Virus record (IMG/VR): IMGVR_UViG_3300046167_000825
Location: 62,001 to 126,000 of that record
Reading direction: 5' to 3' (one strand)
DNA length: 64,000 nucleotides
Shown here: piece by piece, positions 24,761 through 40,886 of the stretch
How positions within the stretch are numbered: position 1 is the stretch's first letter
Layout of the letters: every line of letters starts with the position of its first letter
Translations under genes and position numbers: made by a program
Notes under the pieces: model-generated
What the model saw: only the letters and a program-made list of their open reading frames with translations
The model's database searches: none
What the model was told of the DNA's origin: nothing

Positions 24761-25354
24761 ATGACTATACTATCCATAAATCAAGGGGATTGCTTGGAGC
24801 ATTTGACAACGATGCCAGACGGTTCTGTTGACAGTGTATTGTGTGATCCACCCTATGGGTTGAAGTTCTTCTCACACAACGGTGGGTTTGATAACATAGG
24901 GAACGCCACCCAACAGAAAGAATGGCATCGTGAATGGGTGACACACGCATATCGGCTGTTGAAACCCAACGGTGTTATCAAAGCCTTTTCTAGTCCACGA
25001 ACTCTGCACCATCTGTTGGCGATAATGGTGGAGATCGGCTTTGAGGTGTCCGTAGATTCTTGGTTGTATGTGTCTGGGCGACCAAAGACCATTGATGTGG
25101 CAAAGAGTATTACGGCTTACGAACTAACGGGTTCTTCCTATCAAGGGAAGTTCCACGAACTATCCAAAGGACACAAGAGGTCGAAACTAGACATAGACGA
25201 CTATGTGAATCGAGGGAAGTTCTTCACAAAGGGGCATCAAGAAACCCTAGATTTTGAACTAACCGAGAACGGTCAGAAATGGGATGGATGGCAGTACGGA
25301 TTGAAACCAGCATTTGAACCAATAATTATGGGCTATAAAGGAGCAAAACAATGA
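24761..25354 (+). CDS. N4/N6 DNA methyltransferase, N-terminal catalytic module only (N1)
   Basis: GDCLE, CDPPY, RLLKPNG, YVSGRPK, LKPAFEP. Stops without an FxGxG motif. Confidence 0.8.
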   Translation: MTILSINQGDCLEHLTTMPDGSVDSVLCDPPYGLKFFSHNGGFDNIGNATQQKEWHREWVTHAYRLLKPNGVIKAFSSPRTLHHLLAIMVEIGFEVSVDSWLYVSGRPKTIDVAKSITAYELTGSSYQGKFHELSKGHKRSKLDIDDYVNRGKFFTKGHQETLDFELTENGQKWDGWQYGLKPAFEPIIMGYKGAKQ

Positions 25355-27261
25355 CAACATTAACACTAATGAATGGCGATTGTGTCGCCAAGATGAAAGA
25401 GATGGCAGACGAATCTGTGGATGCTGTTCTGTGTGACCCCCCGTACGGACTGAAGTTCATGAACAAGGATTTCGATGATTTGGGTGAGGGGAAACAACAG
25501 AGAGAGTGGCATGTCCAATGGGTGAAAGAAGCCTTTCGAGTTCTGAAACCGAATGGGGTTATGAAAGCCTTTGGGGGAACTAGAACCTACCAACATCTTC
25601 TTGCAGCAATGGCAGAAGTGGGATTCTCTGTTGACCTTTCTGTCTGGGCATACGGATGTCTATCGGAAGACACCGAAATACTTACGGGCGAAGGGTGGGT
25701 TGAACAATCAAAACTCAATAATGGTTCTATGGTTGTGTCCTATTGTATAGACAAGGACACTTATCAAGTGCAAGCCGTTGAGGAGGTAGTTCGATATGAA
25801 TACAAGGATACCGCTTACAGAATACAATCAGATCATACAGACCAAATCGTGTCCCGAAACCATCGTTGCATTGTTGAACGAGAGGGAGAAAGAACTTTTC
25901 TTTTCGCAGAACACTTGCAAGCAAACGAAGTCGTACCCTTTGTGGAGAGTGTGTCGATACGAGGGTTGCGAAACGATCTTTCAAACGGATACAACACGGC
26001 ACGGGCTAAGAAAGAAACTCTGTTCGACCATTCGAGCACACTATCCGACAAAGACTTGCAAGGGGTGTCACAAGGAGTTTCAAACCAGAGAGAAAACAAC
26101 AAAGTATTGTTCGAGGGCATGTCGACCACCTACATGGGTGACGAAAGTATGCAAGGGGTGCAACAAAGAGTTTCAAACAAAGAGATCCTCACAGACTTGG
26201 TGCAAGCGAGAATGTATGACACTGCCGAAGATCACAAAAGAGTGTCAAGGTTGTGGGAAAGAGTTTCAAGTACCAGATGGGAAAGTGGGGCGAGCAAGGT
26301 TGTATTGCAAGCAAGAATGTCAGAGGAAACCAAAGGTGGAATTGACTTGTTATGTCTGCCAAAAGGTGATCCTAGTGAGAGCAAGAAGATTAGAGCGAGC
26401 AAAAAATCCAACTTGTTCAAGGCAGTGCAACGGAGTTCTGAGGGGCGAGGAATGGAAAGCACACGCTCACAAGGGGCGGGCGAACTGGTCACAAGAGAGC
26501 GAACAAGCCTTAGTGGAGAGAATGACGGGAAGCACCAACCCAGCGTGGAAGGGTGGGGTGACCTATCGCAATCGCAAGGGGAACTACATAACTCAGAGTA
26601 TCGCTTATGTGAGATGCCCAACCGAGTACACCTCAATGGCGAGGAAAGACGGGTATGTGATGGAACATCGTTTGAAAGTGGCACAAGCAGTTGGCAGACC
26701 ACTGACGAGAACCGAATGTGTTCATCACATCAATCACAACGCAGAGGACAATCGGTTGGAGAACTTGATGTTGTTCAAGAACAATCGGGATCACAAACTG
26801 TACGAAGCACATGGGAAACCCGAACCACTTTGGCAACCGTCACCCCAATAGAGTACGAGGGCATTGTATGGTGTGTGAAAGTACCAACGGGTGCTTTTGT
26901 CGCTAGACGGAATGGCAAGGTCTTTGTTACGGGGAACTCTGGCTTCCCAAAATCCCTGAATATAAGTAAGAAACTGGACTCAAGACATAAAGCCCGAACG
27001 GGTGAGGAAGGGGCTATCATTGGTTTCACGAAAGGAGTTGGTGGCGAGAACATCAATGATATCGTGGCTGGTAAAGAAGTGCGAACCACAGATGAAGAAG
27101 GTGGCAAAGGTGTGGGTGCTTACGGTACGGGTGCGAAGCAAGTAGCCGTTGATGTTCCCGTCAGAGAGTGGGTCACAGACGAAGCGAAGACTTGGGAAGG
27201 CTGGGGCACGTCTTTGAAGCCAGCCTTTGAGCCAGTGTGTGTAGGATACAAAAGAGTATGA
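25351..27261 (+). CDS. N4/N6 DNA methyltransferase N-terminal module (N2) containing an intein
   Basis: GDCVA, CDPPY, RVLKPNG, AYG|CLSEDTEILT...VFVTGN|SGFPKS, LKPAFEP. No FxGxG motif. Confidence 0.85.
   Translation: MTTLTLMNGDCVAKMKEMADESVDAVLCDPPYGLKFMNKDFDDLGEGKQQREWHVQWVKEAFRVLKPNGVMKAFGGTRTYQHLLAAMAEVGFSVDLSVWAYGCLSEDTEILTGEGWVEQSKLNNGSMVVSYCIDKDTYQVQAVEEVVRYEYKDTAYRIQSDHTDQIVSRNHRCIVEREGERTFLFAEHLQANEVVPFVESVSIRGLRNDLSNGYNTARAKKETLFDHSSTLSDKDLQGVSQGVSNQRENNKVLFEGMSTTYMGDESMQGVQQRVSNKEILTDLVQARMYDTAEDHKRVSRLWERVSSTRWESGASKVVLQARMSEETKGGIDLLCLPKGDPSESKKIRASKKSNLFKAVQRSSEGRGMESTRSQGAGELVTRERTSLSGENDGKHQPSVEGWGDLSQSQGELHNSEYRLCEMPNRVHLNGEERRVCDGTSFESGTSSWQTTDENRMCSSHQSQRRGQSVGELDVVQEQSGSQTVRSTWETRTTLATVTPIEYEGIVWCVKVPTGAFVARRNGKVFVTGNSGFPKSLNISKKLDSRHKARTGEEGAIIGFTKGVGGENINDIVAGKEVRTTDEEGGKGVGAYGTGAKQVAVDVPVREWVTDEAKTWEGWGTSLKPAFEPVCVGYKRV
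25781..25787 (+). promoter_or_regulatory. Internal Shine-Dalgarno AGGAGGT for the nested HNH ORF
   Basis: 8 nt before ATG 25796, encoded within intein codons. Confidence 0.7.
25796..26851 (+). CDS. HNH homing endonuclease with four CxxC...CxxxC Zn repeats, overprinted inside the intein in a different frame
   Basis: GYVMEHRL...VHHINHNAEDNRLENL (HNH_3-like), NPAWKGG, repeated CKGC.KEFQ...CSRAC, own RBS. Confidence 0.88.
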   Translation: MNTRIPLTEYNQIIQTKSCPETIVALLNEREKELFFSQNTCKQTKSYPLWRVCRYEGCETIFQTDTTRHGLRKKLCSTIRAHYPTKTCKGCHKEFQTREKTTKYCSRACRPPTWVTKVCKGCNKEFQTKRSSQTWCKRECMTLPKITKECQGCGKEFQVPDGKVGRARLYCKQECQRKPKVELTCYVCQKVILVRARRLERAKNPTCSRQCNGVLRGEEWKAHAHKGRANWSQESEQALVERMTGSTNPAWKGGVTYRNRKGNYITQSIAYVRCPTEYTSMARKDGYVMEHRLKVAQAVGRPLTRTECVHHINHNAEDNRLENLMLFKNNRDHKLYEAHGKPEPLWQPSPQ

Positions 27262-27329
27262 CTTTTCTTGCGAACCACTATTTTGTCTGCTACCCTAATA
27301 CAACCAACCAACAGCGAAAGGAGTTTGTT

Positions 27330-27941
27330 ATGGATTGTGTGTGTAAGGGCTGTGGGAAAGACTTTCGTGTTTCTCCCAGTGTTATCCGAAAGGGTGGTGG
27401 TAAGTATTGTTCAAGGGCTTGCACGAAAAAAGGTGAGAACCGAGAGTGTCCTACATGTGGTTCGCAGTTTTATGTCAAGAACGCAGAAATCAAGAGGGGC
27501 TATGGCACATACTGTTCGAGAGAGTGTGCCAACCCAGCACGAGGATTGAGTGGTGAAAACCATCCTCAATGGAAGGGTGGTAAGTACAAGCATGGTGACG
27601 GTTATATAATGGTGCGTGTAGGCACGGATAAATACGAACTAGAGCATCGTGTAGTGATGGCGAACCATTTGGGTCGGGAACTGAAAACCCACGAGCATGT
27701 TCATCACATCAATGGTGTGAAGGATGACAACCGTATAGAGAATCTTGAACTGACTACGGCAAGCCAGCACACGAAAGAGCATCACGCTCCCAAGAAGGAT
27801 TTATCGACTTGGATGGCAGTCGCTTGTTTGAGTTGTGGGAATGTCTTCGCTGAACGGAAGAAAAAGGTAGAGAGAAACCCGAACTGTTTTTGCAACAGAG
27901 ATTGTTATATCGCTGGCAAGAAAAAGAGAGTTGTGCAATGA
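27330..27941 (+). CDS. Free-standing HNH endonuclease with Zn-ribbon repeats
   Basis: AAGGAG RBS before ATG 27330. HPQWKGG, LEHRVVM...HVHHINGVKDDNRIENL. Confidence 0.88.
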   Translation: MDCVCKGCGKDFRVSPSVIRKGGGKYCSRACTKKGENRECPTCGSQFYVKNAEIKRGYGTYCSRECANPARGLSGENHPQWKGGKYKHGDGYIMVRVGTDKYELEHRVVMANHLGRELKTHEHVHHINGVKDDNRIENLELTTASQHTKEHHAPKKDLSTWMAVACLSCGNVFAERKKKVERNPNCFCNRDCYIAGKKKRVVQ

Positions 27942-28225
27942 ACAAGTGTAATAAATGTGGGAAAGAATTGAGTATGTATTATGTGACGGTGGGCGTGATG
28001 GGGAACTTCTGTGGAACAGAGTGCCTAGAAGCCTACCGAACTTATTTACAGAAACAAACTGAACAGAATGCCTACAAGAATCTTTGCAAACTGATTTATG
28101 CAATGAATAGAGTGATGCTCTCCCAAGACCCTTCCGAAAAGGATGTCATCTTCATAAAGAGGGTAGAAGCAGAGGTTTTGAATATGAAAGACTGGATCAC
28201 ACAACTAGCAAAAGTAGAGCAATGA
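27938..28225 (+). CDS. Small Zn-finger protein
   Basis: CNKC...FCGTEC, ATGA coupling. Confidence 0.55.
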   Translation: MNKCNKCGKELSMYYVTVGVMGNFCGTECLEAYRTYLQKQTEQNAYKNLCKLIYAMNRVMLSQDPSEKDVIFIKRVEAEVLNMKDWITQLAKVEQ

Positions 28226-28285
28226 CAGATTTTTGGAAAAAACTAGATGAGGCTTTCGCCTATATCTTTCAAACAAAGAAGAAAA

Positions 28286-29980
28286 ATGACAATACTAAAA
28301 TTAATGAAAGGCGATTGCCTCGAAAAAATGAAGAACCTTGAAAGTTCTTCTGTCCCCTCTATCTTATGCGACCCACCTTACGGCTTGGAGTTCATCACTG
28401 AACTAGAAGGGAAATCACGGAACTTGATGAACCCCACTAGCGAAGCAGATATCAAACGGAAAGAAGACTATGGGAACTCGTACGCTGGGCGTGCCTCCAA
28501 CCTTCCCGATTTGGGTAAGTTCGGACAGTATGGGAAAGGGGTACAAGAGTGGCACAAGGGTTGGGTTGGGGCTTGTCATAGGGTATTGTCAGAAGACGGC
28601 TCGTTGATGGCTTTCAATTCCAGCAAGACCTCTCACCGAATGATAGCCGCTATGGTCGAACTAGGGTTTCACATTTCTATTGATGCTTGGGTATATCTGT
28701 CTGGGATGCCCAAAGCACGAGACTTAGGGGCTGGTGTAGGTTGGTATACAAACTTGAAGCCCTCTTATGAACCTATCATTGTGTGCCGAAAACAAAAAGG
28801 AGAAACTATGCACAAATCACATTTAATTTATATCGGACGGAAGCCTTTGAGCGAGAGGAACATCGCAGAGAATGTTTTGAAGCACGGGACGGGTGCGATG
28901 AACATTGATGCTTGTCGAATAGGTGACGAGGAGCGAACTTACACGGGAAGTGGTGAATCTCAAATGAGATACAATGACGACCGTGCTGGTTTGGCAGATG
29001 GGAGAGGAAAAGAACTTGAGTTCACGGTAAAAGGTCGATGGCCCGCAAACTCTATCTTCTCTAGTTCATGTGCCAAGATTCTTACAAAGCAGATTGGGGC
29101 AGAGGCTTCCACTTATTTTTTCATTTCTGAGGATCGTTTTGATAACCACAATTCGTATAACAACAACAAGGAGAACACTATGAATGTACCATCAGATTTA
29201 TTAGACTATTTACACACGATGATTACCCCCACACATGTGGGAGGGGAAAGTCTCATCATCCAAGAGGGCTTGAACGATCACGACTTCAGCCAATACACCG
29301 ACAATCAATGGCACGGTTGTATCGCTGTTGGAACACCGACAGAGGAAACAAGCAAGGAACTTATGAGAGTCATGAAGGCTGGTGCTCATTTGATGTTGAT
29401 AGCCCCCGAAGAAGAACCCACTGGTTATAAGGGTGCTTGTCAGATTGAGGACACGGGATTTGAAATCAGAGATTCTATATTTTGGGCGAGAGAAACCGAC
29501 CCAGAGAATCCCAACTTCATGTACATGCCAAAGGCTTCACGGAGTGAGAGAGAACTAGGCACAGAGCATTTGAAAAAAGTCAGTGGTGCTGAAGCCGTTG
29601 ATCGGAAAGAAGGTTCTGCTGGGATGGACAACCCCCGTGCTGGTGCTGGTAGAACAGCCACAGAGATTGGTAATTTTCATCCGACTGTCAAGCCCATTGG
29701 GATTATGGAATGGTTGGCTCGTGATGTACCAAAAGGTGCGACAGTTCTAGACCCATTTATGGGTTCTGGCACTATGGGTATCGCTTGTGTGAAGACGGGA
29801 CACTCTTATATAGGCACAGAGATTGACGAGAGTTACTTCCCTATTGCAGATGCTCGTATCCGTCATTGGAATGAAACCTATTGTGCTTGGGATAGTGCTG
29901 AGGTCATTTCTGACCTAGATGAGGAAGAGACAGAGGATGTCCTAGCCCCTATCGACTTGAACAGTTTCTTGGGTTTTTAG
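28286..29980 (+). CDS. Beta-class N4/N6 DNA methyltransferase: N module (N3) + middle module + C module
   Basis: CDPPY, YLSGMPK, IGRKPL...NIDACRI...GRWPAN, HPTVKP, DPFMGSG. In-frame AAGGAG+ATG at 28808 and 29180. Confidence 0.85.
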   Translation: MTILKLMKGDCLEKMKNLESSSVPSILCDPPYGLEFITELEGKSRNLMNPTSEADIKRKEDYGNSYAGRASNLPDLGKFGQYGKGVQEWHKGWVGACHRVLSEDGSLMAFNSSKTSHRMIAAMVELGFHISIDAWVYLSGMPKARDLGAGVGWYTNLKPSYEPIIVCRKQKGETMHKSHLIYIGRKPLSERNIAENVLKHGTGAMNIDACRIGDEERTYTGSGESQMRYNDDRAGLADGRGKELEFTVKGRWPANSIFSSSCAKILTKQIGAEASTYFFISEDRFDNHNSYNNNKENTMNVPSDLLDYLHTMITPTHVGGESLIIQEGLNDHDFSQYTDNQWHGCIAVGTPTEETSKELMRVMKAGAHLMLIAPEEEPTGYKGACQIEDTGFEIRDSIFWARETDPENPNFMYMPKASRSERELGTEHLKKVSGAEAVDRKEGSAGMDNPRAGAGRTATEIGNFHPTVKPIGIMEWLARDVPKGATVLDPFMGSGTMGIACVKTGHSYIGTEIDESYFPIADARIRHWNETYCAWDSAEVISDLDEEETEDVLAPIDLNSFLGF

Positions 29981-30352: not shown

Positions 30353-30353
30353 A

Positions 30354-30908: not shown

Positions 30909-31060
30909 CGAAGCACTTTGATATGTTGCCGAGCCTCCTTCAAATAGAGGTGAGGGCTTTACACGACAGAAGGTTATCACTCACACCTATCGAACGCAGA
31001 AGGTATCTTTGGTTGGCTAAGAAAGCCCTTTATCTCTATGCCTTGAAAGCCTCGTTATGA
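30905..31060 (+). CDS. Small hypothetical protein
   Basis: GGAGG upstream, ATGA coupling on both sides. Confidence 0.45.
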   Translation: MTKHFDMLPSLLQIEVRALHDRRLSLTPIERRRYLWLAKKALYLYALKASL

Positions 31061-31702: not shown

Positions 31703-34399
31703 ATGAACCTCAATGACTTTCTATTCGACAAACATGGCAGAAGTAAAGCGTCTGCCCCCACAGCCACAATGAAAGAGTGGATGAGAGATTATCGCTTTGA
31801 ATTAGTGACAAATGACACCATCGCAAAAGTGGTGGATGAATGTATTGAGGCTGGTTTGTACGGGATAGACTTGGAAACAACGGGTCTTGATAACCGAGTT
31901 TACAACAACAGAACAGTCGATCAAATTGTTGGTATATGCCTCGCTCCGAAAGCCCATGTGGGCTATTACATTCCCGTTCGTCATCGGGAGGATGGGGCAG
32001 AGAGAAATGTGTCAATATCGTTGGTTGAGAGTGAAATCAAACGATTGTCTGAAGCAGACTCAGTGGGCATTTTCCACAATGCGAAGTTCGATCTCGTGTT
32101 CCTTGAAAACAGTGGGATGGGGATGTGGGATTCACACAAGGGCTTTGAGGATACTTTCATCCTTGCTTACTTATCCGACACGAGGATGCGTAGGAAAGGT
32201 TTGAAATACCTCACCAACAACTTGTTGGGGTTAGAGATGATCGAACTCAAAGAGTTGTTCCCACAAGACCATAAAGGGAAACTAGATTACTCTTTGCTTG
32301 ACCCCTCTCTCCCAGAGGTGTTGGCGTATGCTGCGAGTGATGCCGTTTGTACTTATATGTTATTCAAGGAGTTCCACCCGAAAGTCATTGGTGACAAAGC
32401 CGAGCCAGATCAGTCTGTTGTGTATGCTATGGAGAAGGGGTGTCTAGCAGCAACAAGATGGATGGAGAAGAATAAGATGCCCACTGACCGAGAGGTCATT
32501 AAAGAATTGATTAAACTTGGTCAGCAAGAAATGTTCGACTCATTGGAAGAAGTCTATCTCACTGCCAAAGATATTCTCGGTAGAGAAGTCGCACCGAGTT
32601 GGTTCTATTATTTGAAAGAGAACTTTGACCCCTCACCCACCCAGCCGATCAAAGACCAAATTGACAACGCAAAGAACCACGAGAAGCGAATGGGCGTGGT
32701 TGAAGTAGACACCGTGCATAAAGAGGTCAAGAGCCTCCTAGACGGTCGTAAAACGGAGATACGGGAGTTTCCCTTTGTCTATGACATTCTCTCAGCCAAA
32801 CAGTTGGGGACAATGATGTGGGAGATGGGTATTGGAGGTTTGAAAGTCACAGACAAGAGCCGAGAGAAGCATGAAGCCGACCCTAAGAAAGACTTACAGA
32901 TTAAGACCACCAAAGATGAGATGGATCGTTTGATGAACACGATGGGTGATAAGTTCCCTTTCATGAATAAAATCAAACGGTTTCGTGAAACACAGAAGGC
33001 TTTGTCTACCAATCTCCTCCCTATGTATGAGGATGCAGACGAGAATGGCGACCTCAGAATTAATTTCAAGCAACAAGGAACTGACACGGGGAGATTTACT
33101 ACGCCAGGGACTAAGGATCGTGGTGAGGGATTACACGGAGGCACAAGGTTCAATCTTCATTCTCTACCCTCCACTTATGACCCAAGTCGTCCAGAGTGTA
33201 TGAGAAGACTCCGAGAGTGTATAAAAGCCCGTGAGGGTATGTTCCTAGCAGCCATTGACTTCAGTGGTGAGGAATTGCGTATTGTAACCAATCTATCGGG
33301 AGAGCCTTTGTGGTTGGAGCAATTTTTCCGATGTTCTGATTGCGATACCCACTTTGATAGGAAAGAACGTCCACCCAAGTTTTGTCCGAATTGTGGTTCT
33401 GATAAAATCGGTGACTTGCACTCATTGACGGCTCTCTCTATCTTTGGTAAAGAAGCCAAGAAAGACCCCCGATGGAAAGCCCTTCGTGGTCAAGGGAAAG
33501 CCACGAACTTCGCTCTTTGTTATGGTGGTGGTCGTGGGGCAGTAATGCGTGCCGTTGGTGTTGATGAGAATGAAGGTGCGAGGATTAAAGCCCAGTTCGA
33601 TAAGACCTACAAGGGTCTATCTACTTGGTGGGGTCAGCAGAAAGAAAAAGCAGTGCAGAAAGGGTGGGTGCAGACCTCTTTCGGTCGGAAATACCCCGTG
33701 CCAGATGCTCTCTTGCCGAAGAAAGGTATGACACATGGTATTCCCAACAGTGGTTTGATTGCGAAAGCCCAACGGAACTCTATCAATGGCCCCATTCAAG
33801 GCACTGGTGCAGATATCTTGAAGATCGCTATGTGGCACATTTATCACGAAGCAAAGAAACGAGATTGGTTAGACCGAGCGAGAATACTTGCTTGTATGCA
33901 CGATGAAATCTTGTTTGAGATTGAAGGGGAAATCCTTGAAGAAGCCATTGATGTCTACACCGAAATTATGGCACAGAAGACAGTCGCCTCAAGACGGTGG
34001 CGAGTTCCCTTGACGGTCGATGTTGAGATAGGGAAGAACTGGAAAGTTCCGTATGACCTCTATGCTATCCGAAACGGTGAAGAAGCCATGCCAGAGGAAC
34101 TAGCCCCTTACCTCAATCAAGAACGAATAAAAGAATCCGTGAAAGACAAAACCCCCGAAGAAGATAAACCCGAAGAGATCCAACTCAAGGGGGGTGTCTT
34201 TGAGTTCGTGATTACGAAGGACAAGTCTTACGGGCTAGGCGACTGTCTTGCCAAAGTGCTGTTCAAAGCCAATAACAGTGGTACGAAACCTCTCCGTGTC
34301 CTCACAAGAGGGGGTGGGGTCATACTAGATGTTGAGGATGGCTTCCTCGTTAATCCATATATTTTCACAGAAGAAGCAACCGTTGAGGGATTGGTATGA
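31703..34399 (+). CDS. polA: Family A DNA polymerase with 3'-5' exonuclease (no 5'-3' exo)
   Basis: IDLETTGL, HNAKFD, YAASDA. Motif A DFSGEELR, motif B RGQGKATNFALCYG (Phe at the 762-equivalent), motif C MHDE. Confidence 0.93.
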   Translation: MNLNDFLFDKHGRSKASAPTATMKEWMRDYRFELVTNDTIAKVVDECIEAGLYGIDLETTGLDNRVYNNRTVDQIVGICLAPKAHVGYYIPVRHREDGAERNVSISLVESEIKRLSEADSVGIFHNAKFDLVFLENSGMGMWDSHKGFEDTFILAYLSDTRMRRKGLKYLTNNLLGLEMIELKELFPQDHKGKLDYSLLDPSLPEVLAYAASDAVCTYMLFKEFHPKVIGDKAEPDQSVVYAMEKGCLAATRWMEKNKMPTDREVIKELIKLGQQEMFDSLEEVYLTAKDILGREVAPSWFYYLKENFDPSPTQPIKDQIDNAKNHEKRMGVVEVDTVHKEVKSLLDGRKTEIREFPFVYDILSAKQLGTMMWEMGIGGLKVTDKSREKHEADPKKDLQIKTTKDEMDRLMNTMGDKFPFMNKIKRFRETQKALSTNLLPMYEDADENGDLRINFKQQGTDTGRFTTPGTKDRGEGLHGGTRFNLHSLPSTYDPSRPECMRRLRECIKAREGMFLAAIDFSGEELRIVTNLSGEPLWLEQFFRCSDCDTHFDRKERPPKFCPNCGSDKIGDLHSLTALSIFGKEAKKDPRWKALRGQGKATNFALCYGGGRGAVMRAVGVDENEGARIKAQFDKTYKGLSTWWGQQKEKAVQKGWVQTSFGRKYPVPDALLPKKGMTHGIPNSGLIAKAQRNSINGPIQGTGADILKIAMWHIYHEAKKRDWLDRARILACMHDEILFEIEGEILEEAIDVYTEIMAQKTVASRRWRVPLTVDVEIGKNWKVPYDLYAIRNGEEAMPEELAPYLNQERIKESVKDKTPEEDKPEEIQLKGGVFEFVITKDKSYGLGDCLAKVLFKANNSGTKPLRVLTRGGGVILDVEDGFLVNPYIFTEEATVEGLV

Positions 34400-35987: not shown

Positions 35988-36490
35988 ACATACACGAAAA
36001 ATTGTGGGAGAACTACAAGCAGAACACCACAAAAGACATATATGACCAAGAGGGGTCATATAACATTATGTACCAAGCCGAGATTCTTGGTGATGGTGGG
36101 CAGACGATTTCATTTAAGGCTTTAGATCGTCATCATGAGTATGACTTTGAATCTGTGTATGGGCAAGTTGATGTTGCTTTATATGAGCAAGATGCTCTCT
36201 TTGTACGGAACTTTGAGAGGGCAGTTGGAGAGAAATCTTTGGAAGGTATTGTTGACGAGATGTTCCCCCAGTGGAAAGAAGATTGGGATATACCCAACAA
36301 TGACCTTTATTCAAACTTGAACATGGAAGATTTACTAGAGGACATCTGTTGGCATAAAGATGGGATGCAGAGATTCATGACTTTCTTCGGCTATGCCCGA
36401 TTGCTCAATAGTGATATTTGGTTCGACACTAATTATGTCGCACCCTTCCATGAAGATCCGAACCAGTTGAAACTTGACTTTGGTGTATAA
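35984..36490 (+). CDS. Hypothetical acidic protein
   Basis: GGAG RBS, ATGA coupling. Confidence 0.6.
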   Translation: MNIHEKLWENYKQNTTKDIYDQEGSYNIMYQAEILGDGGQTISFKALDRHHEYDFESVYGQVDVALYEQDALFVRNFERAVGEKSLEGIVDEMFPQWKEDWDIPNNDLYSNLNMEDLLEDICWHKDGMQRFMTFFGYARLLNSDIWFDTNYVAPFHEDPNQLKLDFGV

Positions 36491-36909
36491 TGAAAACCTT
36501 CACTATGAAATATTGTGGGTGTGAATACACTTGGGACGTGGAAGTCATTTGGGAGGCGACCTCCTCATTTGAGGGCGAGGCTTTACCTCTCACCGAACTA
36601 GAACACACTCTCGATTGGGATTGCTGGAGTGGTGAGATGTATCCGAGCAACCTTCTCTATCACTATCAAAGGGTGATTGATGCTGATCTTCATTTCCCTA
36701 TAATAGTGACAAGAAACCAGTGGGGGAACATCGATCATGTTGTGGATGGTATGCACCGTATCGTTAAAGCCTTTGCTCATAGTCACGAGAAAATAATGGC
36801 TAAAGAGATAGGGGTAGATTGGCTCACGGGGTTGCCTACTATATCAAAGAATTGTTATTGTGGTGTGTGTGGCTGTGACCCATGTGATTGCAATTGGGGC
36901 AACGAATAA
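36490..36909 (+). CDS. ParB/Srx-like domain protein
   Basis: ADLHFPIIV...VVDGMHRIVKA. Confidence 0.7.
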   Translation: MKTFTMKYCGCEYTWDVEVIWEATSSFEGEALPLTELEHTLDWDCWSGEMYPSNLLYHYQRVIDADLHFPIIVTRNQWGNIDHVVDGMHRIVKAFAHSHEKIMAKEIGVDWLTGLPTISKNCYCGVCGCDPCDCNWGNE

Positions 36910-37112
36910 TGAAAATCACAGAGGGAAATAGACGGATAAGAGATGCAAGAATATCTTATAAAGGGAGAGGGGGTGTGATTCTACGAGCGAGAGTCGGGAG
37001 AAAGCCCACACCCATAATGGCAGAGATACAGTTCCAGTTTGGGGATAGAGAAACGCACGATATCTCTGAGGCTTATTGGGACACAGAGAAAAAACTTTGG
37101 GTGGTGGGATGA
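36909..37112 (+). CDS. Hypothetical protein
   Basis: TAATG coupling. Confidence 0.5.
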   Translation: MKITEGNRRIRDARISYKGRGGVILRARVGRKPTPIMAEIQFQFGDRETHDISEAYWDTEKKLWVVG

Positions 37113-37537
37113 TTATTACAATAGGAAGAAAGCCTTTTAAGGGTGCAGTCATAGACAATGTCATGAAGAATCACTGTGGGGGGATCAACATAGACCCTTG
37201 TCGGATTACCTTTCAGACAGACGGGGTGCGAAAAGAAACCAAGCGAACCCCAAGAGATGACACAGCCGTATGGACTGACAAGAACAGTGGTATGAAGAAA
37301 GAGAACTCTTTGTATGCCGATGCCGACCCACGAGGTCGCTTCCCCGCCAATGTTCTGTTCTCAGAGAGTGTTACCCACCACTTACCCAAAGCGACACAAG
37401 GTCACTGGGCTAATGCGAAGGTCACGGGCTATGGTGATCGTATCGGTTCGGGGACAGTTGAATATCCTGATGTTGGTGAAAAAGATCAAAGTGGTGGCTC
37501 GGTAGCAAAATACTTCTTCATTTTGCGAGGTGTTTGA
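37109..37537 (+). CDS. Stand-alone methyltransferase middle module (M2)
   Basis: MIITIGRKPF...NV...GGINIDPCRI...GRFPANV...SVAKYF aligns with the middle of the 28286 ORF. No DPPY or FxGxG motif. Confidence 0.75.
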   Translation: MIITIGRKPFKGAVIDNVMKNHCGGINIDPCRITFQTDGVRKETKRTPRDDTAVWTDKNSGMKKENSLYADADPRGRFPANVLFSESVTHHLPKATQGHWANAKVTGYGDRIGSGTVEYPDVGEKDQSGGSVAKYFFILRGV

Positions 37538-37713
37538 TGCTTATTATAGGTTTCTTTCTACTGGGGTGTCACCACAGAACGGTTGGAGTGATAGACATTA
37601 TTGATAATGGTGTCTGTGCTGTCCAGATTGATGAGGCTACCACAATACTAGTCAATGGGTCGAAATGTAAAGGACTTAAAGAGGGCGACAGCCTTTTAAT
37701 GGAGATGAAATGA
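37537..37713 (+). CDS. Small putative lipoprotein (58 aa, not in the ORF track)
   Basis: MLIIGFFLLGC lipobox-like, TGATG coupling. Confidence 0.45.
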   Translation: MLIIGFFLLGCHHRTVGVIDIIDNGVCAVQIDEATTILVNGSKCKGLKEGDSLLMEMK

Positions 37714-37754
37714 TTATTACGATTGGGAGAAAACCTTATTTCAAAAAAGTCTAG
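37710..37754 (+). pseudogene. 14-codon remnant of a methyltransferase middle module (MIITIGRKPYFKKV)
   Basis: First 9 aa are identical to the starts of 37109 and 40575, and YFKKV matches the end of 40575. Confidence 0.6.
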
Positions 37755-37759
37755 TATTG

Positions 37760-37788
37760 GGATCGCTGCTCTGATTGATTTCCGTATA
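37760..37788 (+). promoter_or_regulatory. Bipartite promoter motif GGATCG-N15-TCCGTATA
   Basis: Exact consensus, 32 nt before ATG 37821. Confidence 0.75.
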
Positions 37789-37820
37789 GAAAAGGAACAA
37801 TTAAAAGACGAGGTGGTCGC

Positions 37821-38153
37821 ATGAGTAGAACGGGAACTTGGGTACTAGCCCAACAATGGGAAAATGAGAATTGGTCACCACACGAAGGTGATTACATGGA
37901 TTATTCCCCACACGATTTTGCGATCTCTCAACCAGAATGGCATGCAGTGTTCGGTGAATGTGTGGGGTTGCTCTTTCAAGCCCTCACGGAGCAAGGTGGT
38001 GGGGAAACACCCGCACGGATTCTGTATAGTAAGGCAGAGAATATGGCTGTCGATATCATTGCTATACAGAGAGAGAAGAGCATAGCCGAAGCCTATAAAG
38101 AACTTGGATATGAAATGGCTAACACCGAGTCATCAGATGAACTACCCTTTTAA
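37821..38153 (+). CDS. Hypothetical protein with SSB-like C-terminal tail (SSDELPF)
   Basis: GAGG RBS, acidic tail ending in PF. Confidence 0.6.
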   Translation: MSRTGTWVLAQQWENENWSPHEGDYMDYSPHDFAISQPEWHAVFGECVGLLFQALTEQGGGETPARILYSKAENMAVDIIAIQREKSIAEAYKELGYEMANTESSDELPF

Positions 38154-38163
38154 GGAGGATACG

Positions 38164-38610
38164 ATGAAAGTTAAAATCAAAAAACTACACGAAGATGCAG
38201 TCATACCGAAATACGCACATGAGAGTGATGCTGGAATGGATTTACACTGTGTTCGGAGAGGTTGGGATGACTATGGGAATGTTGTTTATTTCACTGGGCT
38301 TGCCTTTGAGATACCGAGTGGGTATGTGGGGTTGCTATTCCCCCGTAGTTCGGTCTGTAAGAAGGAACTCTCGCTCACGAACTCAGTGGGTGTCATAGAT
38401 TCTGGTTATCGGGGTGAAGTCATGATGAAGTTCAGCAACACCGAGAACCCAAAAGAACCGTATCTCTACACAGAAGGGAAAATCTATGAGGTAGGGGAAC
38501 GAATCGGTCAGTTGATTATCATGCCCTACCCCAAGATTGAGTTCGTCTTATCAGACGAGTTGGGGGATTCTGAGAGAGGATCTGGTGGTTATGGTTCAAC
38601 GGGACAATGA
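38164..38610 (+). CDS. dut: Trimeric dUTPase
   Basis: AGMDL, PRSS, GVIDSGYRGE, RIGQLI, RGSGGYGSTG. AAGGAGG RBS. Confidence 0.95.
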   Translation: MKVKIKKLHEDAVIPKYAHESDAGMDLHCVRRGWDDYGNVVYFTGLAFEIPSGYVGLLFPRSSVCKKELSLTNSVGVIDSGYRGEVMMKFSNTENPKEPYLYTEGKIYEVGERIGQLIIMPYPKIEFVLSDELGDSERGSGGYGSTGQ

Positions 38611-38629
38611 TAAACAAAAAGGAGGTCTT

Positions 38630-39163
38630 ATGGATTATGTGAAGCAAACCCTAGTTTCTTCAATACAGAGTATTATCGGAACGTCTGAGGGCAACATGCA
38701 CTACATTGCGACTCATGTGCGTGATGGTAAGCGAGTACCACTTCGCTTGCTTGACATCCAAGGGGCAAGGGGTCGGAGAGCCTTTGAGTTGGAAACGCTA
38801 CGGAGATACACGACTCTTTGTGTTCAAAGGGGTGAAACCCACAGTTATTTCCTCATGGAGGTCTTTATGTTGATGGCTGTGGAGAGGGGTTTGAAGGAAG
38901 TGGGCGTGGTTTTACATCAGAGGCTAACTCCCACTCAAATTGTTGCTTCGGCAGAACAAGTTTTCCCTCTGAAAGATTGGCTTGCTGCATCGAAGATGTC
39001 AGATGAGATGCTGTTATCTGACGAGAAGCATGCCCCGAAAGTGATGGAAACTGTCATTGAGGTGGAAGACGAGGAAGACGAGGAAGATGTACTAGAAGAG
39101 GACAAGGGGAAAGAGGGGGATAGCGATGATGACGATGACGATGACTGGGGAGGTTGGTTATGA
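38630..39163 (+). CDS. Hypothetical protein with a long D/E tail
   Basis: AAGGAGG RBS, ends EDEEDEED...DDDDDDDWGGWL. Confidence 0.65.
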   Translation: MDYVKQTLVSSIQSIIGTSEGNMHYIATHVRDGKRVPLRLLDIQGARGRRAFELETLRRYTTLCVQRGETHSYFLMEVFMLMAVERGLKEVGVVLHQRLTPTQIVASAEQVFPLKDWLAASKMSDEMLLSDEKHAPKVMETVIEVEDEEDEEDVLEEDKGKEGDSDDDDDDDWGGWL

Positions 39164-39369
39164 AAGTGACTGTAAAGATTGTGGGGGATAAAGGGTATAT
39201 CGAGAAGGGTGTGATAGGTGTTGGTTTTGGGGCTTGGGGGAGGGCTGGGAGTATAAAAGTACAACTTGGTCTGCCCGATTTCCCGAAGTCTTTACCACAA
39301 GAAGAATGGCGAAGCATCACGGCAGATAGGATTGTTGATGTTGAAACCAACACCCCACGAAAGACATGA
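39160..39369 (+). CDS. Hypothetical protein
   Basis: GGAGG RBS. Confidence 0.5.
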   Translation: MKVTVKIVGDKGYIEKGVIGVGFGAWGRAGSIKVQLGLPDFPKSLPQEEWRSITADRIVDVETNTPRKT

Positions 39370-39575
39370 GTGGGTATGATGTACGAGTGAAGGTGAAAGA
39401 CGGTGTTCCCTATGTCATTAAAAAGACAATAGGGGAAACTTATGCTTCTTGGGCACATAGCGAGAAGTCCTTAATACCGAGAACACTGGGGCTAAATGAA
39501 AGACCCGTTGCAGTGTCACAAACACAATGGAATAAGATCAAGGCAGACCGAAAGGTCACAATACGACTGACATAA
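39366..39575 (+). CDS. Hypothetical protein
   Basis: ATGA coupling. Confidence 0.5.
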   Translation: MSGYDVRVKVKDGVPYVIKKTIGETYASWAHSEKSLIPRTLGLNERPVAVSQTQWNKIKADRKVTIRLT

Positions 39576-39590
39576 AAAGGGAGCGAGGAA

Positions 39591-39800
39591 ATGACAGAAG
39601 AAATTACAGTGGAAAGCACAGTCCAGAAGTTTTTGGTGTTGAAGATGTTTTCCGAAACTATGTATGTGGGAAACATCAATCAGTTCGTGGGCATCATAAA
39701 TGGTGATGATCACGACAATATCCGAGAGTTTTACCCCAATAAAGACATCCAGTTTTTCAAGGATGTCCTTGATAAATTAAATGAAAGTTACGAAGTATAA
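39591..39800 (+). CDS. Hypothetical protein
   Basis: GAGG RBS. Confidence 0.55.
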   Translation: MTEEITVESTVQKFLVLKMFSETMYVGNINQFVGIINGDDHDNIREFYPNKDIQFFKDVLDKLNESYEV

Positions 39801-39808
39801 AGGAGCAA

Positions 39809-40117
39809 ATGATGAACCTAGAATTATCAGACAGAGAGCAAATGTTGTTGGAAAGTGTCTTACGGATGGTATTGAGTGACCTATTAGATGGCGACCCAAT
39901 GGTAGTTGAGGATTACACAGCCGTTCTCACAAATCTGAACAATGGGGTTTTTGGGGAGAAGCAATATAAGTTTGATGACCCCAATGATTGGATGACGACC
40001 CTCCTTGATTTACGCACTCTCTTAGATCGCCTCAATCCAGAGTGGGTTGAGATATGTAAAGAACGAGGTGTTGAATCATACATCGAAGAAGATTCTGATT
40101 ACGAGCCTCTTGATTAA
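39809..40117 (+). CDS. Hypothetical acidic protein
   Basis: AAGGAG RBS. Confidence 0.6.
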   Translation: MMNLELSDREQMLLESVLRMVLSDLLDGDPMVVEDYTAVLTNLNNGVFGEKQYKFDDPNDWMTTLLDLRTLLDRLNPEWVEICKERGVESYIEEDSDYEPLD

Positions 40118-40129
40118 GGTTGTGCTGAT

Positions 40130-40321
40130 ATGTTGAAAAAGTTTTTAGAGAGAATCGGTTTTGTTATAGGTCACCCTAGAACCTTGTCCCACAAAGAGAA
40201 TAACCTCTTGAGGGAAGAGGGCTTGATGTCATCATGTGAGGTCGCTTGGGAATCTTTCGACTGCAAACATTGGTTTATACGGAACAACAAAACCAGTGAA
40301 ATGCGAGTGGTGACCAAATGA
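40130..40321 (+). CDS. Hypothetical protein
   Basis: AAGGT RBS. Confidence 0.5.
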   Translation: MLKKFLERIGFVIGHPRTLSHKENNLLREEGLMSSCEVAWESFDCKHWFIRNNKTSEMRVVTK

Positions 40322-40560
40322 TTATCAATATATTTCTGACATTGATAGCGATGGTGTTTCTGACGACAGTTTTCTTTGAGGCATTGACCCCTTTGTTTGA
40401 GATGTTTTTCCCAAAAACAGTCACTCAATGGGGGCTGAGGAAGAAACGGATAGAACTGAACAAGATAGAGCAAGAGAACTTGCTTCTAGGACAGAAGAAA
40501 GAAGCCATCCAGAAACAGAAAGCCTTAGAAGATTTTCTTCGGGAACATAACCTTTCATAA
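40318..40560 (+). CDS. Single-TM protein with coiled coil
   Basis: Hydrophobic N-terminus, ATGA coupling. Confidence 0.55.
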   Translation: MIINIFLTLIAMVFLTTVFFEALTPLFEMFFPKTVTQWGLRKKRIELNKIEQENLLLGQKKEAIQKQKALEDFLREHNLS

Positions 40561-40574
40561 CATACGGACAGATA

Positions 40575-40886
40575 ATGATTATCACAATAGGTAGGAAGCC
40601 TTTCAAGGGTGCAGTAGTGGACAATGTGAAAGACAACGCTTGTGGTGGGTTAAACATCAATGAAACCCGTATTGGAACAGAGGGAGGTCGAACCAACAAA
40701 GGGGGCTATCAAGATTCTTTTGTGGGAGGCACAGTGGATTACAAAACCTCTGGGGTTGAAACCGATCTCACACCGAAAGGGAGATGGGCTGCGAATGTGA
40801 TAATCAATACTGCTTCTTCTCGGGCTTTAGATGAACAAAGTGGGGGTACTGTTGCAAGCAGATATTTCAAAAAGGTGGGCAAATGA
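40575..40886 (+). CDS. Stand-alone methyltransferase middle module (M3)
   Basis: MIITIGRKPFKGAVVDNV...GGLNINETRI...GRWAANV...VASRYFKKV. Confidence 0.75.
   Translation: MIITIGRKPFKGAVVDNVKDNACGGLNINETRIGTEGGRTNKGGYQDSFVGGTVDYKTSGVETDLTPKGRWAANVIINTASSRALDEQSGGTVASRYFKKVGK

What the first reader, a model, noticed from the sequence alone, without database searches (positions are those of the whole stretch)
24761..40886. Modular split DNA methyltransferase: several catalytic and middle modules share one SAM-binding module
Seen: three N-modules with DPPY (24761, 25351, 28286) each end just after LKP(A/S)xEP. Three middle modules start (I/L)I(T/Y)IGRKP and end at a (Y/F)F motif (28808 internal, 37109, 40575). 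Only one FxGxG (DPFMGSG) module exists, at 29180-29980. Established: full-length beta-class MTases of this type run DPPY...KPAxEP..ARKP...NIDxCR...GRWPAN...RFF...HPTVKP...DPFMGSG in one chain, and several beta-class MTases act as dimers. Inference: the repeated breakpoints and retained RBSs suggest deliberate fragmentation. Combinatorial assembly in trans could give several specificities against host restriction.
Basis: partly seen in the sequence, partly recalled or inferred. Interest (0 to 1): 0.8.

Follow-up and report, generated by a model that had tools for sequence, protein, structure and literature searches.

The report
Three-piece phage DNA methyltransferase system
A large marine phage encodes its DNA methyltransferase as separate catalytic-half, DNA-recognition and cofactor-binding proteins, with several versions of the first two and only one of the third; the same layout recurs in related phages, so it is probably a working multi-subunit enzyme kit, though no biochemistry has tested this.

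Summary
The window comes from a 289-kb marine phage contig. It holds three DPPY catalytic-half modules (N), three middle modules (M) plus a 14-aa vestige, and one FxGxG module (C').

The pieces are not debris:
- N1, the N2 exteins and M142 give dN/dS of 0.08-0.12 against a relative that is as diverged as its DNA polymerase.
- Free N and M proteins form metagenomic families with breakpoints fixed to within a few residues.
- In 157 loci, all 10 with a C' carry free N and free M and exactly one C'. None of the 147 without C' carries both.
- Natural fusions occur in several orders (M-C', M-M-C', C'-N, N-M-C').

New points:
- C' is a pseudo-enzyme: a dead N-like half (GTPT in place of DPPY) joined to the SAM-binding half.
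- In AlphaFold models, N plus the SAM-binding half rebuild the canonical beta-class fold. C' alone does not.
- The 577-aa ORF is a re-fusion that keeps AAGGAG sites before both internal starts.
- N2 carries a probable intein with an HNH gene overprinted in the +1 frame.

Trans-assembly, methylation activity and combinatorial specificity remain inferred. I judge it a new variant of known split or multi-subunit methyltransferases.

The parts
24761..25354 (+). N1: free-standing catalytic-half module (197 aa; motifs IV-VIII with DPPY; ends 4 residues after the seam lysine; no FxGxG)
   Evidence: Pfam PF01555 positions 1-74, 31.1 bits. Aligned to single-chain homologues. dN/dS 0.11 against L004:2603-3196. 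Belongs to an N-only family of 28 clusters.
25351..27261 (+). N2: catalytic-half module interrupted by a probable intein. Exteins are 25351-25656 and 26938-27261. Its start overlaps the N1 stop (ATGA), and AAGGAG lies upstream.
   Evidence: The intein-less orthologue L004:3215-3832 reads ..YG|SGFPKS.. across the insertion point. Extein dN/dS is 0.08. PF01555 hit.
25657..26937 (+). Probable intein in N2 (427 aa; Cys1 'CLSEDTE', ends '..VTGN' followed by Ser+1). Its middle roughly 280 aa is a hydrophilic read-through of the HNH gene in another frame.
   Evidence: Boundaries set by the intein-less orthologue. Pfam Intein_splicing covers profile positions 18-147 at E 6.6e-4, below the gathering score. 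No stop codon in this frame.
25796..26851 (+). HNH endonuclease ORF (351 aa) overprinted in the +1 frame inside the intein
   Evidence: Pfam HNH_3, 28.3 bits, above the cut-off. Paralogue of the neighbouring HNH, E 3e-19. Of 106 at-risk codon junctions, none is preceded by a T; 0 of 5000 synonymous shuffles keep the intein frame open. Independent metagenome contigs carry the sequence without indels.
27330..27941 (+). Free-standing HNH endonuclease gene between N2 and N3 (the mechanical ORF starts at GTG 27237). Context only: a mobile element, not part of the enzyme.
   Evidence: Pfam HNH_3, 46.5 bits. One contig in run X6 joins 27245 to 27928, so it lacks this gene.
28286..28807 (+). N3: catalytic-half module, first part of the 577-aa fused ORF (mechanical ORF start 28247)
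   Evidence: DPPY at 28370. Aligned. Ends EPIIVCRKQKGET immediately before the internal Met.
28808..29179 (+). Internal M module of the fused ORF. It has its own ATG with AAGGAG 7 nt upstream, starts MHKSHLIYIGRKP and ends STYFF.
   Evidence: The seam strand is duplicated (EPIIVCRK / LIYIGRKP). The model places these as neighbouring strands, 174-181 and 190-198.
29180..29980 (+). C': the shared module, with its own ATG and AAGGAG upstream. Ca (29180-29512) is a degenerate N-like half with GTPT in place of DPPY. Cb (29513-29980) carries FMYMPKAS, HPTVKP (motif X), DPFMGSG (motif I) and an acidic tail ending IDLNSFLGF.
   Evidence: PF01555 profile positions 33-219, 94.3 bits. Free-standing orthologue L007:8379-9182. 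C' family alignments A4 and A5, where the motif IV position is G[TEQ]P and never DPPY.
37109..37537 (+). M142: free-standing middle (target-recognition-like) module, 142 aa
   Evidence: Belongs to a family of 65 free-standing clusters. 75% identical to L004:10001-10429, dN/dS 0.12. Conserved frame MIITIGRKP..GGINID.CRI..GRFPAN..YFF with two hypervariable stretches.
37710..37754 (+). Vestigial M module: a 14-aa ORF, MIITIGRKPYFKKV*, consisting of start box plus end box only
40575..40886 (+). M103: free-standing middle module, 103 aa. Its stop overlaps the start of a PLD-like ORF (ATGA).
   Evidence: phrog_3008 positions 2-96.

Best explanation
This is a multi-subunit beta-class DNA amino-methyltransferase (N6-adenine/N4-cytosine type, PF01555). 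The single chain of ordinary relatives (N half with motifs IV-VIII, then recognition domain, then SAM half with motifs X and I-III) is here encoded as three kinds of protein.

- N modules carry the catalytic DPPY half of the Rossmann fold plus variable loops.
- M modules are the recognition domain: a conserved frame with two hypervariable stretches.
- A single C' module carries the SAM-binding half, fused to a catalytically dead copy of the N half.

Inferred mechanism: an N module docks onto the SAM-binding half of C'. This recreates the beta1/beta4 junction of the fold, so DPPY faces the bound SAM. An M module supplies sequence recognition. It is held by its two terminal strands (IIxIGRKP and YFF), which duplicate the seam strands of N and C'. 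Several N and M paralogues use the one C', which would let the phage methylate several motifs on its own DNA and escape host restriction.

The 577-aa ORF is a secondary in-frame re-fusion of one N, one M and C'. Because it keeps both internal ribosome-binding sites, it could also yield free M-C' and C'.

Shown: the anatomy, the conservation, purifying selection, co-occurrence, natural fusions, and model geometry. Inferred: assembly in trans, methylation activity, which N works with which M, and the biological purpose.
For: - Mapping of the pieces on single-chain homologues, with breaks at EPIxxARKP and RFFYxAKAS.
- Purifying selection on N1, N2 exteins and M142, dN/dS 0.08-0.12.
- N-only family: 27 of 28 keep DPPY, none has FxGxG, and they end 1-6 residues after the seam. 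M-only family: 57 of 65 start at the box.
- Syntenic or independent split sets in L004, L007 (C' free-standing), L011 (6 N, 6 M, 1 C'), and simple N->M->C' operons in L129, L131 and L151.
- Census of 157 loci: 10 of 10 loci with C' have free N and free M and exactly one C'. None of 147 loci without C' has both. All 21 free N keep motif IV.
- Fusions in different orders among the top 150 of 32,939 hits: M-C' about 55, C' alone about 28, C'-N 3-4, M-M(-M)-C' 3, N-M-C' 4.
- In C', motifs I and X are invariant, while the motif IV position is always G[TEQ]P.
- AlphaFold model of the fused ORF: pLDDT 85, pTM 0.87. It matches solved beta-class MTases over about 525-555 alignment columns with TM 0.64-0.75 normalised to the target, which requires N and Cb to sit together. 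The C'-alone model (pLDDT 89) matches the same targets at TM of only 0.26-0.31.
- AAGGAG precedes both internal starts.
- N2 carries a probable intein kept in frame, which fits a protein that is needed.
Against: - No biochemical or methylome data exist.
The alignment fed to AlphaFold contained single-chain relatives, which could impose their geometry on the model.
- The role of the dead half (Ca) is unexplained. If Ca completed the fold in cis, it would block N.
- Expression evidence is limited to a few 151-nt contigs in RNA libraries, which may be DNA carry-over.
- Only 64 kb of the 289-kb genome was searched for further SAM modules.
- Relatives also carry complete small methyltransferases (L004: 244, 251, 255 and 273 aa), so multi-specificity does not strictly need the split system.
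Confidence: 0.7

Rival explanations
1. Fixed cognate sets, not a combinatorial kit. Each N works only with its own M (or M's) on the common C', so the number of specificities equals the number of sets (about 3 here) and not N x M.
For: - Adjacent N->M pairs with overlapping stop and start, such as L007 7214-7789 and 7786-8193.
- N, M, M, N, M, M, C' order in L133, and equal counts (6:6) in L011.
- N and M paralogues are old orthologous lines kept across genomes, not recent copies.
Against: - M outnumbers N in most sets (1:2, 1:3, 2:4, 3:4).
- In the window and in L004 the free M genes lie kilobases away from the N genes.
- Seam strands are near-identical among paralogues, so no obvious pairing code is visible.
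Confidence: 0.35
2. The N and/or M modules have taken on jobs that do not need C'. They might be small DNA-binding proteins, regulators or anti-restriction decoys derived from methyltransferase parts, with only the fused N3-M-C' protein acting as a methyltransferase.
For: - M103 is translationally coupled to a PLD-like nuclease ORF rather than to a methyltransferase piece.
- The same N-terminal box heads an MT-A70 enzyme, in the window at 41831 and in L004.
- M modules have no Pfam family of their own.
Against: - DPPY is kept in 27 of 28 N-only clusters and in all 21 free N of the census. That is hard to explain without catalysis.
- Free N and free M are found together only where a C' is present (10/10 against 0/147).
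- In L007, L129 and L151 there is no fused enzyme at all, only separate N, M and C'.
Confidence: 0.12
3. Silent cassettes for DNA-level switching. The free M (and N) genes would be donors that recombine into the expressed fused gene through the conserved boxes, as in pilin or hsdS cassette systems.
For: - Conserved box sequences flank a variable core.
- The 14-aa 'empty' ORF at 37710 looks like a cassette whose core was deleted between the boxes.
- Other genes start with the same box.
Against: - DNA identity between copies is low: 77% over 83 nt between the two free M genes, and about 82% over 17 nt to the internal M.
- All copies are in direct orientation, with essential genes such as the DNA polymerase between them.
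- Each free module has its own start codon, and they evolve under protein-level purifying selection.
- No recombinase gene or inverted repeats are associated.
- Independent assemblies show no rearranged joints apart from the loss of an HNH gene.
Confidence: 0.05
4. Gene debris. The pieces would be remains of methyltransferase genes broken by the homing endonucleases that crowd this region, with no function of their own.
For: - Two HNH genes and an intein lie among the N modules.
- A vestigial M exists at 37710.
Against: - dN/dS is about 0.1, with divergence equal to that of the polymerase.
- Identical breakpoints occur in lineages only about 45% identical and of different G+C content.
- The families number dozens of clusters.
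- The numerical pattern is constant, with one C' per set.
Confidence: 0.03

Closest known systems
Single-chain beta-class DNA methyltransferases of the same family (PF01555), e.g. Salmonella phage 9NA gp61, Pseudomonas phage PP9W2 gp055, mycobacteriophage ShiLan gp65. Solved relatives: CcrM (6pbd), M.BceJIV (8urk), M.RsrI, M1.HpyAVI.
   Same: Same motifs in the same order: DPPY ... KPxxEPIxxARKP ... NIDxCRI ... GRWPAN ... RFFYxAKAS ... HPTVKP ... DPFxGSG. The fused-ORF model shows the same fold.
   Different: Here the chain is cut at two fixed points into separate genes. The N and M parts are multiplied. The SAM part carries an extra dead N-like half that single-chain enzymes lack.
Type I restriction-modification enzymes (HsdM + HsdS) and Type IIB enzymes such as BcgI, where the recognition domain is a separate subunit (reviews PMC3874165 and PMC4027205, seen as abstracts; the rest is my own knowledge)
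   Same: Sequence recognition sits on a separate polypeptide. One methylation subunit can serve different specificity subunits.
   Different: Those enzymes are gamma-class with an intact catalytic domain. HsdS has two recognition domains and coiled-coil spacers. They have no split of the Rossmann fold itself and no dead paralogue half. They belong to host defence, not to a phage.
Natural two-polypeptide C5-cytosine methyltransferases M.AquI and M.EcoHK31I (named in PMC3404938 and PMC2836561)
   Same: A DNA methyltransferase catalytic domain naturally divided between two gene products that must associate.
   Different: These are C5 class with two pieces in a one-to-one pairing and a different cut position (inside or next to the variable region). 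There are no multiple alternative partners and no pseudo-enzyme half.
Multispecific C5 methyltransferases of Bacillus phages (SPR, phi3T, rho11s), with several recognition domains in tandem in one chain (my own knowledge; the term appears in PMC8936443)
   Same: A phage strategy of one catalytic or cofactor core serving several recognition domains to counter many host restriction systems. Some relatives found here also have tandem M-M(-M) modules in one chain.
   Different: A different methyltransferase class, and all domains sit in one polypeptide.
Active/dead paralogue complexes of beta-class relatives: METTL3-METTL14 and the ciliate MTA1-MTA9-p1-p2 complex. Also the obligate 'division of labour' dimers of M.EcoP15I and CcrM (PMC7544214).
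   Same: A catalytically dead paralogous unit is kept as a structural partner. DNA recognition and catalysis are assigned to different polypeptides.
   Different: In those complexes each partner has a whole fold and the active one binds its own SAM. Here the live catalytic loop and the SAM pocket are on different polypeptides.
[quoted passage not shown]
   Same: The host is the same methylase family. An HNH gene lies in another frame, while the host frame is kept free of stop codons.
   Different: The ShiLan insertion has no detectable splicing domain. Here the overprinted HNH sits inside an element with intein-like ends (Cys1, terminal Asn, Ser+1, weak Hint match), and it has an ATG start.

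Membership tests
Beta-class DNA amino-methyltransferase (PF01555 N6_N4_Mtase) | Significant match to the family profile | tested here: met
   Scores against the gathering cut-off of 26.7 bits: N1 31.1, N2 38.7, the 577-aa ORF 94.3. Each free N covers only profile positions 1-82. C' covers positions 33-219. The M modules match no Pfam family.
Beta-class DNA amino-methyltransferase (PF01555 N6_N4_Mtase) | Motif order IV (DPPY) -> recognition domain -> X -> I (FxGxG) in one active unit | tested here: inconclusive
   The order holds in the fused ORF and across gene order in N->M->C' operons. For the free pieces it can hold only after assembly, which was not tested.
Beta-class DNA amino-methyltransferase (PF01555 N6_N4_Mtase) | Canonical seven-stranded fold with motif IV next to motif I | tested here: met
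   Met for the model of the fused ORF only: TM 0.64-0.75 (normalised to target) against RsrI, MboIIA, M.BceJIV and HpyAVI, over an alignment that spans N and Cb. The C'-alone model does not meet it (TM 0.26-0.31).
Beta-class DNA amino-methyltransferase (PF01555 N6_N4_Mtase) | SAM-dependent methylation of adenine N6 or cytosine N4 in DNA | not testable with these tools
   Needs expression and methylome reading.
Split / multi-subunit methyltransferase (functional class) | Pieces are separate, conserved genes under purifying selection | tested here: met
Split / multi-subunit methyltransferase (functional class) | Pieces co-occur and are found fused in other genomes | tested here: met
   10/10 against 0/147 loci. 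M-C', C'-N and N-M-C' fusions exist.
Split / multi-subunit methyltransferase (functional class) | Pieces bind each other, and activity needs all of them | not testable with these tools
   No multimer prediction or experiment was available. There is only indirect support from the fused-ORF model.
Intein (Hint domain) in N2 | Precise in-frame insertion absent from an orthologue; N-terminal Cys/Ser; C-terminal Asn followed by Cys/Ser/Thr | tested here: met
   L004 orthologue reads ..YG|SGFPKS... The window element starts CLSEDTE and ends VTGN|S.
Intein (Hint domain) in N2 | Significant match to a Hint/intein splicing profile | tested here: inconclusive
   PF14890 scores 19.9 bits at E 6.6e-4, below the 35.8-bit gathering score, though it spans profile positions 18-147. 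No sequence match in the PDB. The penultimate residue is Gly, not His.
HNH homing endonuclease (overprinted ORF 25796-26851) | HNH motif profile match | tested here: met
   PF13392 scores 28.3 bits against a cut-off of 24.8. Paralogue of the free-standing HNH at 27330-27941. Cleavage and homing were not tested.

The most novel reading that the evidence does not exclude
A truly combinatorial enzyme kit. Any N module and any M module could assemble on the single C' hub, giving up to N x M specificities: 9 here and 36 in L011. The M module would act as a bridge: its first strand would complete the dead half of C', and its last strand would complete the N module. The same N-terminal docking strand (MI[IV]T[IV][GA]RKP) would also recruit other enzymes, such as the MT-A70 methyltransferase or a PLD-like nuclease coupled to M103. 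This would be a natural plug-and-play system that splits a Rossmann fold at its beta1/beta4 switch point.
Probability: 0.2. Interest if true: 0.9.

Novelty: new variant of a known kind. Interest (0 to 1): 0.75.

Why it matters
Beta-class DNA methyltransferases are treated as single-chain enzymes that act as homodimers. A natural system that puts the catalytic loop, the recognition domain and the cofactor pocket on three exchangeable proteins would be new to the field, especially with a dead paralogous half kept on the shared subunit.

It would show how far a Rossmann-fold enzyme can be taken apart in nature. It would also explain how large phages buy many methylation specificities cheaply: 100-200 codons per new specificity instead of about 400. 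And it would offer a ready-made scaffold for programmable or split methyltransferases.

The system is not a one-off. The pieces form families of dozens of clusters in marine and other metagenomes, and databases currently label them only as 'DNA methyltransferase' or leave them unnamed.

Tried and rejected
- Near-identical DNA in cultured phages: none found. The closest phage record is an unannotated 485-kb uncultured phage, with polymerase identity of 46%.
- Free-standing M modules in cultured phages: tblastn hits all lie inside single-chain methylases, including a Microcystis phage ORF that turned out to be 434 aa.
- Introns or ribozymes joining the pieces: no Rfam family and no tRNA in the window.
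- Split inteins at the seams: rejected. N ends 1-6 residues after the seam and M starts with the box, which leaves no room for intein halves.
- Recombination cassettes: DNA repeats between copies are short and diverged, and there are no inverted repeats of note.
- Frameshift or assembly error as the cause of the two open frames in the intein: rejected. The third frame has 24 stops while the intein frame has none, synonymous shuffles never reproduce this, and independent assemblies agree.
- PLD-like ORF: only weak matches (Pfam 24.6 bits, below cut-off; PDB Nuc E 0.45), so no conclusion.
- Literature: six searches found no description of a tripartite beta-class methyltransferase.
- Context of the M-C' protein P0103: gene sizes suggest an array of about 8 M-sized ORFs, but no DNA was available to check.

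Full report
**Source and setting.** The window matches IMG/VR contig IMGVR_UViG_3300046167_000825 (289,014 bp) at 100% identity. More than twenty seawater and marine metagenome runs hold the sequence. The region lies in the replication block of a large phage: DnaB, a primase-like protein, family A DNA polymerase and dUTPase. All the genes discussed are on the + strand. No cultured phage is close. The best phage record is an unannotated 485-kb uncultured phage with 46% polymerase identity.

**Checking the observation.**
- N1 (24761-25354, 197 aa) and N2 (25351-27261) carry DPPY and stop a few residues after KPAFEP(I/V)xxGYK.
- N3 starts at ATG 28286 inside the 577-aa ORF 28247-29980.
- Middle modules begin (I/L)I(T/Y)IGRKP and end at a (Y/F)F motif. 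They lie at 28808 (internal), 37109-37537 and 40575-40886.
- A six-frame scan of the whole window finds only one beta-class HPTVKP/DPFMGSG module, at 29180-29980.
- The DNA pattern for the start box occurs three times against 0.01 expected by chance.
- The third copy, at 37710, heads a 14-aa ORF, MIITIGRKPYFKKV*. This is a start box joined directly to an end box.
- AAGGAG lies 7 nt upstream of the internal ATGs at 28808 and 29180, the same spacing as at the polymerase gene.

**Mapping on single-chain enzymes.** I aligned the pieces with Salmonella phage 9NA gp61, Pseudomonas phage PP9W2 gp055 and an Arthrobacter phage methylase. This places the cuts at EPIxxARKP and at RFFYxAKAS. Both seams are duplicated. 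N ends with its own copy of the first strand (EPIIMGYK) and M begins with another (MIITIGRKP). M ends with YFF and C' contains its own FMYMPKAS. In the fused ORF the duplicates sit side by side (EPIIVCRKQKGET-MHKSHLIYIGRKP), each following an internal Met. The fused ORF therefore reads as three formerly separate genes joined in frame.

**The shared module is a pseudo-enzyme.** Pfam aligns residues 366-534 of the 577-aa protein to profile positions 33-219. The part upstream of HPTVKP is therefore a second, degenerate copy of motifs IV-VIII, with GTPT where DPPY should be. Across the family this position is always G(T/E/Q)P and never DPPY, while motifs X and I are invariant. I call the dead half Ca, the SAM half Cb, and the whole unit C'.

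**Relatives.** In the syntenic contig L004 (137.8 kb; proteins 66-86% identical) the same region holds:
- three free N modules, including the N2 orthologue without any insertion;
- a fused N-M-C' of 582 aa;
- four tandem free M modules;
- four complete small methyltransferases.

In a 299-kb TARA contig (L007) everything is separate: two N, three or four M (three by reading the ORFs, four in the automated census), and a free-standing 267-aa C' with GTPT.

In L011 (125.7 kb, higher G+C, C' only 45% identical) one C' is followed by six N and six M. All are cut at the same residues.

Simple N->M->C' operons occur in L129/L131 and L151. Expanded sets occur in L118, L128 and L133.

**Selection and breakpoint precision.** Against L004, dN/dS is 0.11 for N1, 0.08 for the N2 exteins and 0.12 for M142. 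Amino-acid identities are 0.73-0.80, against 0.72 for the DNA polymerase. Synonymous sites are near saturation, so these ratios are rough, but they are clearly far below 1.

A word-indexed search restricted to proteins of similar length found 65 clusters of free M proteins and 28 of free N proteins.
- Among the N proteins, 27 of 28 keep DPPY and none has FxGxG. They end 1-6 residues after the seam lysine.
- Among the M proteins, 57 of 65 start with the box at residue 1. They end 5-10 residues after the (Y/F)(F/Y).
- M modules share a fixed frame (MIITIGRKP..GGINID.CRI, GRFPAN, GGASRYFK) around two stretches that vary from 0 to more than 100 residues. This is the expected look of a recognition domain.

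**Co-occurrence and fusions.** In 157 loci gathered from relatives and from two IMG/VR scans, all ten with a C' carry at least one free N and one free M, and exactly one C'. N:M counts are 1:1, 1:2, 1:3, 2:4, 3:4 and 6:6; for the window's own contig only 2:1 is seen within the 20.8 kb fetched. None of the 147 loci without C' carries both. All 21 free N keep motif IV.

An exhaustive search of 1.84 billion representatives with the 577-aa protein gave 32,939 hits. Among the best 150 the architectures are:
- M-C', about 55;
- canonical N-M-Cb, about 50;
- C' alone, about 28;
- C'-N, 3-4;
- M-M(-M)-C', 3;
- N-M-C', 4;
- N-M-M(-M)-Cb, 3.

Fusions of the same parts in different orders are the classical sign of proteins that work together. 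PHROGs already contains families for the pieces: phrog_6025 for N only and phrog_3008 for M + Cb. Both are annotated simply as DNA methyltransferase.

**Structure models.** AlphaFold2 on the fused ORF with a 137-sequence alignment gave pLDDT 85 and pTM 0.87. The two copies of the first seam strand (residues 174-181 and 190-198) are predicted as neighbouring strands. Foldseek against the PDB returned CcrM, M.BceJIV, M.RsrI, M.MboIIA, TTHA0409 and M1.HpyAVI. The alignments span about 525-555 columns, with TM 0.64-0.75 normalised to the roughly 190-280-residue targets. A score that high over an alignment running from the N part to the far C-terminus is possible only if N and Cb sit together as one canonical domain. 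That leaves Ca as an extra lobe.

The C'-alone model (pLDDT 89, pTM 0.75) hits the same targets at only TM 0.26-0.31, with rmsd about 22 A. In the models, therefore, Ca and Cb do not close into the canonical fold.

Two caveats apply.

**Proposed mechanism.** Beta-class enzymes have a topological switch point between strands beta1 and beta4. They are thought to act only as dimers, with recognition and catalysis divided between the subunits (PMC7544214). The split described here falls at that switch point.

I infer the following:
- N (beta4-beta7, with DPPY) docks on Cb (helix X, beta1-beta3, with SAM) to form the active site.
- M provides recognition and is tethered by its terminal strands.
- Ca is the relic of the second, non-catalytic protomer, or a scaffold for M.
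- Multiple N and M paralogues then give several specificities from one cofactor subunit, presumably to protect the phage DNA from host restriction.

Whether N and M mix freely or work in fixed sets is open. M is at least as numerous as N in most sets, and gene order such as N, M, M, N, M, M, C' can be read either way.

**Rivals.**
- Debris from homing-endonuclease damage is excluded by selection, recurrence and the constant pattern.
- DNA-level cassette switching is unlikely. Repeats are short and diverged, all copies are direct with essential genes between them, and independent assemblies show no rearrangement apart from the loss of one HNH gene.
- Independent functions for N or M cannot be excluded. 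They fit poorly with the strict retention of DPPY and the exclusive co-occurrence with C'.

**The intein and its hidden endonuclease.** N2 is interrupted between ..AYG and SGFPKS.. by 427 residues (25657-26937) that are absent from the L004 orthologue. The element begins with Cys and ends with Asn followed by Ser. It gives a sub-threshold intein-splicing match spanning profile positions 18-147.

Inside it, in the +1 frame, lies a 351-aa HNH endonuclease ORF (25796-26851). It has a Pfam HNH_3 match above cut-off and is a paralogue of the free-standing HNH at 27330-27941.

The intein frame has no stop codon, whereas the third frame has 24. Of the 106 HNH codons that begin with AA, AG or GA, none follows a codon ending in T, against 25% elsewhere. 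None of 5000 synonymous shuffles keeps the intein frame open; their mean is 19 stops. Independent metagenome contigs confirm the sequence.

An out-of-frame HNH inside an in-frame-open insertion of a phage methylase of this same family was described in 2025 as the ShiLan domain, which has no splicing domain (PMC11855218). The case here appears to be the same trick inside an intein. It is also a continuous counterpart of the 'fractured genes' with split inteins and free-standing endonucleases (PMC2677866).

**Verdict.** I found no description of a three-part beta-class methyltransferase with one shared pseudo-enzyme subunit. I rate it a new variant of known split or multi-subunit methyltransferases. 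It is of high interest pending biochemical proof.

Noticed in passing
window 25657-26937 (intein frame) and 25796-26851 (+1 frame): A probable intein in N2 carries a complete HNH endonuclease ORF overprinted in the +1 frame. Both frames stay open for 1056 nt (0 stops against 24 in the third frame), and there is a strong synonymous-site signature. It resembles the published 'ShiLan domain' but sits inside an intein.
   Followed up: yes
window 37710-37754: A 14-aa ORF, MIITIGRKPYFKKV*, consists of the M-module start box joined directly to the end box. It has its own GGAG site and an ATGA overlap with the upstream 59-aa ORF. It looks like an M module whose core was deleted.
   Followed up: partly
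window 41831-42445 (and L004:20247-); also L004:18941-19573: An MT-A70 family methyltransferase (DPPW) begins MITVARKP, the same N-terminal box as the M modules, and this is conserved in L004. In L004 a TRM-like methyltransferase begins MIVTIATKP. In the window the MT-A70 gene follows the FmdB-type zinc-ribbon ORF 41658-41834; in L007 an M module follows the homologous zinc-ribbon ORF.
   Followed up: partly
window 29900-29980; L004 and L007 methyltransferase C-termini: Every FxGxG-bearing methyltransferase of these phages ends with an acidic stretch followed by (I/L)x(L/F)xxF(L/F)G(F/W/L). No other ORF in the loci has this tail. From memory it recalls the C-terminal clamp-binding tails of T4-type replication proteins. 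This was not tested.
   Followed up: partly
window 40883-41656: A PLD-like ORF (Pfam PLDc_2 at 24.6 bits, below cut-off; weak PDB match to Nuc endonuclease) starts within the stop codon of M103 (ATGA). This suggests translational coupling between a recognition-type module and a possible nuclease.
   Followed up: partly
window 27245-27928: One contig of an independent marine metagenome (run X6) joins 27245 to 27928, so it lacks the free-standing HNH gene. The gene is therefore a presence/absence polymorphism in the phage population. The same run also shows two 3-nt in-frame deletions in the fused ORF, at 29001 and 29943.
   Followed up: partly
L011:10928-16623: Several N modules of the high-G+C relative carry Cys-rich insertions after DPPY (for example CSVCGG..CPC and CTKCGH..CVCP). 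These look like zinc ribbons, so N modules may also contribute to DNA recognition.
   Followed up: no
window 31703-34399: The family A DNA polymerase has a CxxC...CxxC insertion (..FFRCSDCDTHFDRKERPPKFCPNCGSD..). Its closest phage relative matches in three pieces spread over 4.9 kb, which suggests insertions in that relative's polymerase gene.
   Followed up: no
context of protein P0103 (ENA contig of 122 kb, no DNA available): An M-C' fusion gene is followed about 3 kb downstream by a 204-aa weak PF01555 ORF, and then by a run of about eight ORFs of 133-165 aa. This may be another large array of M modules.
   Followed up: no
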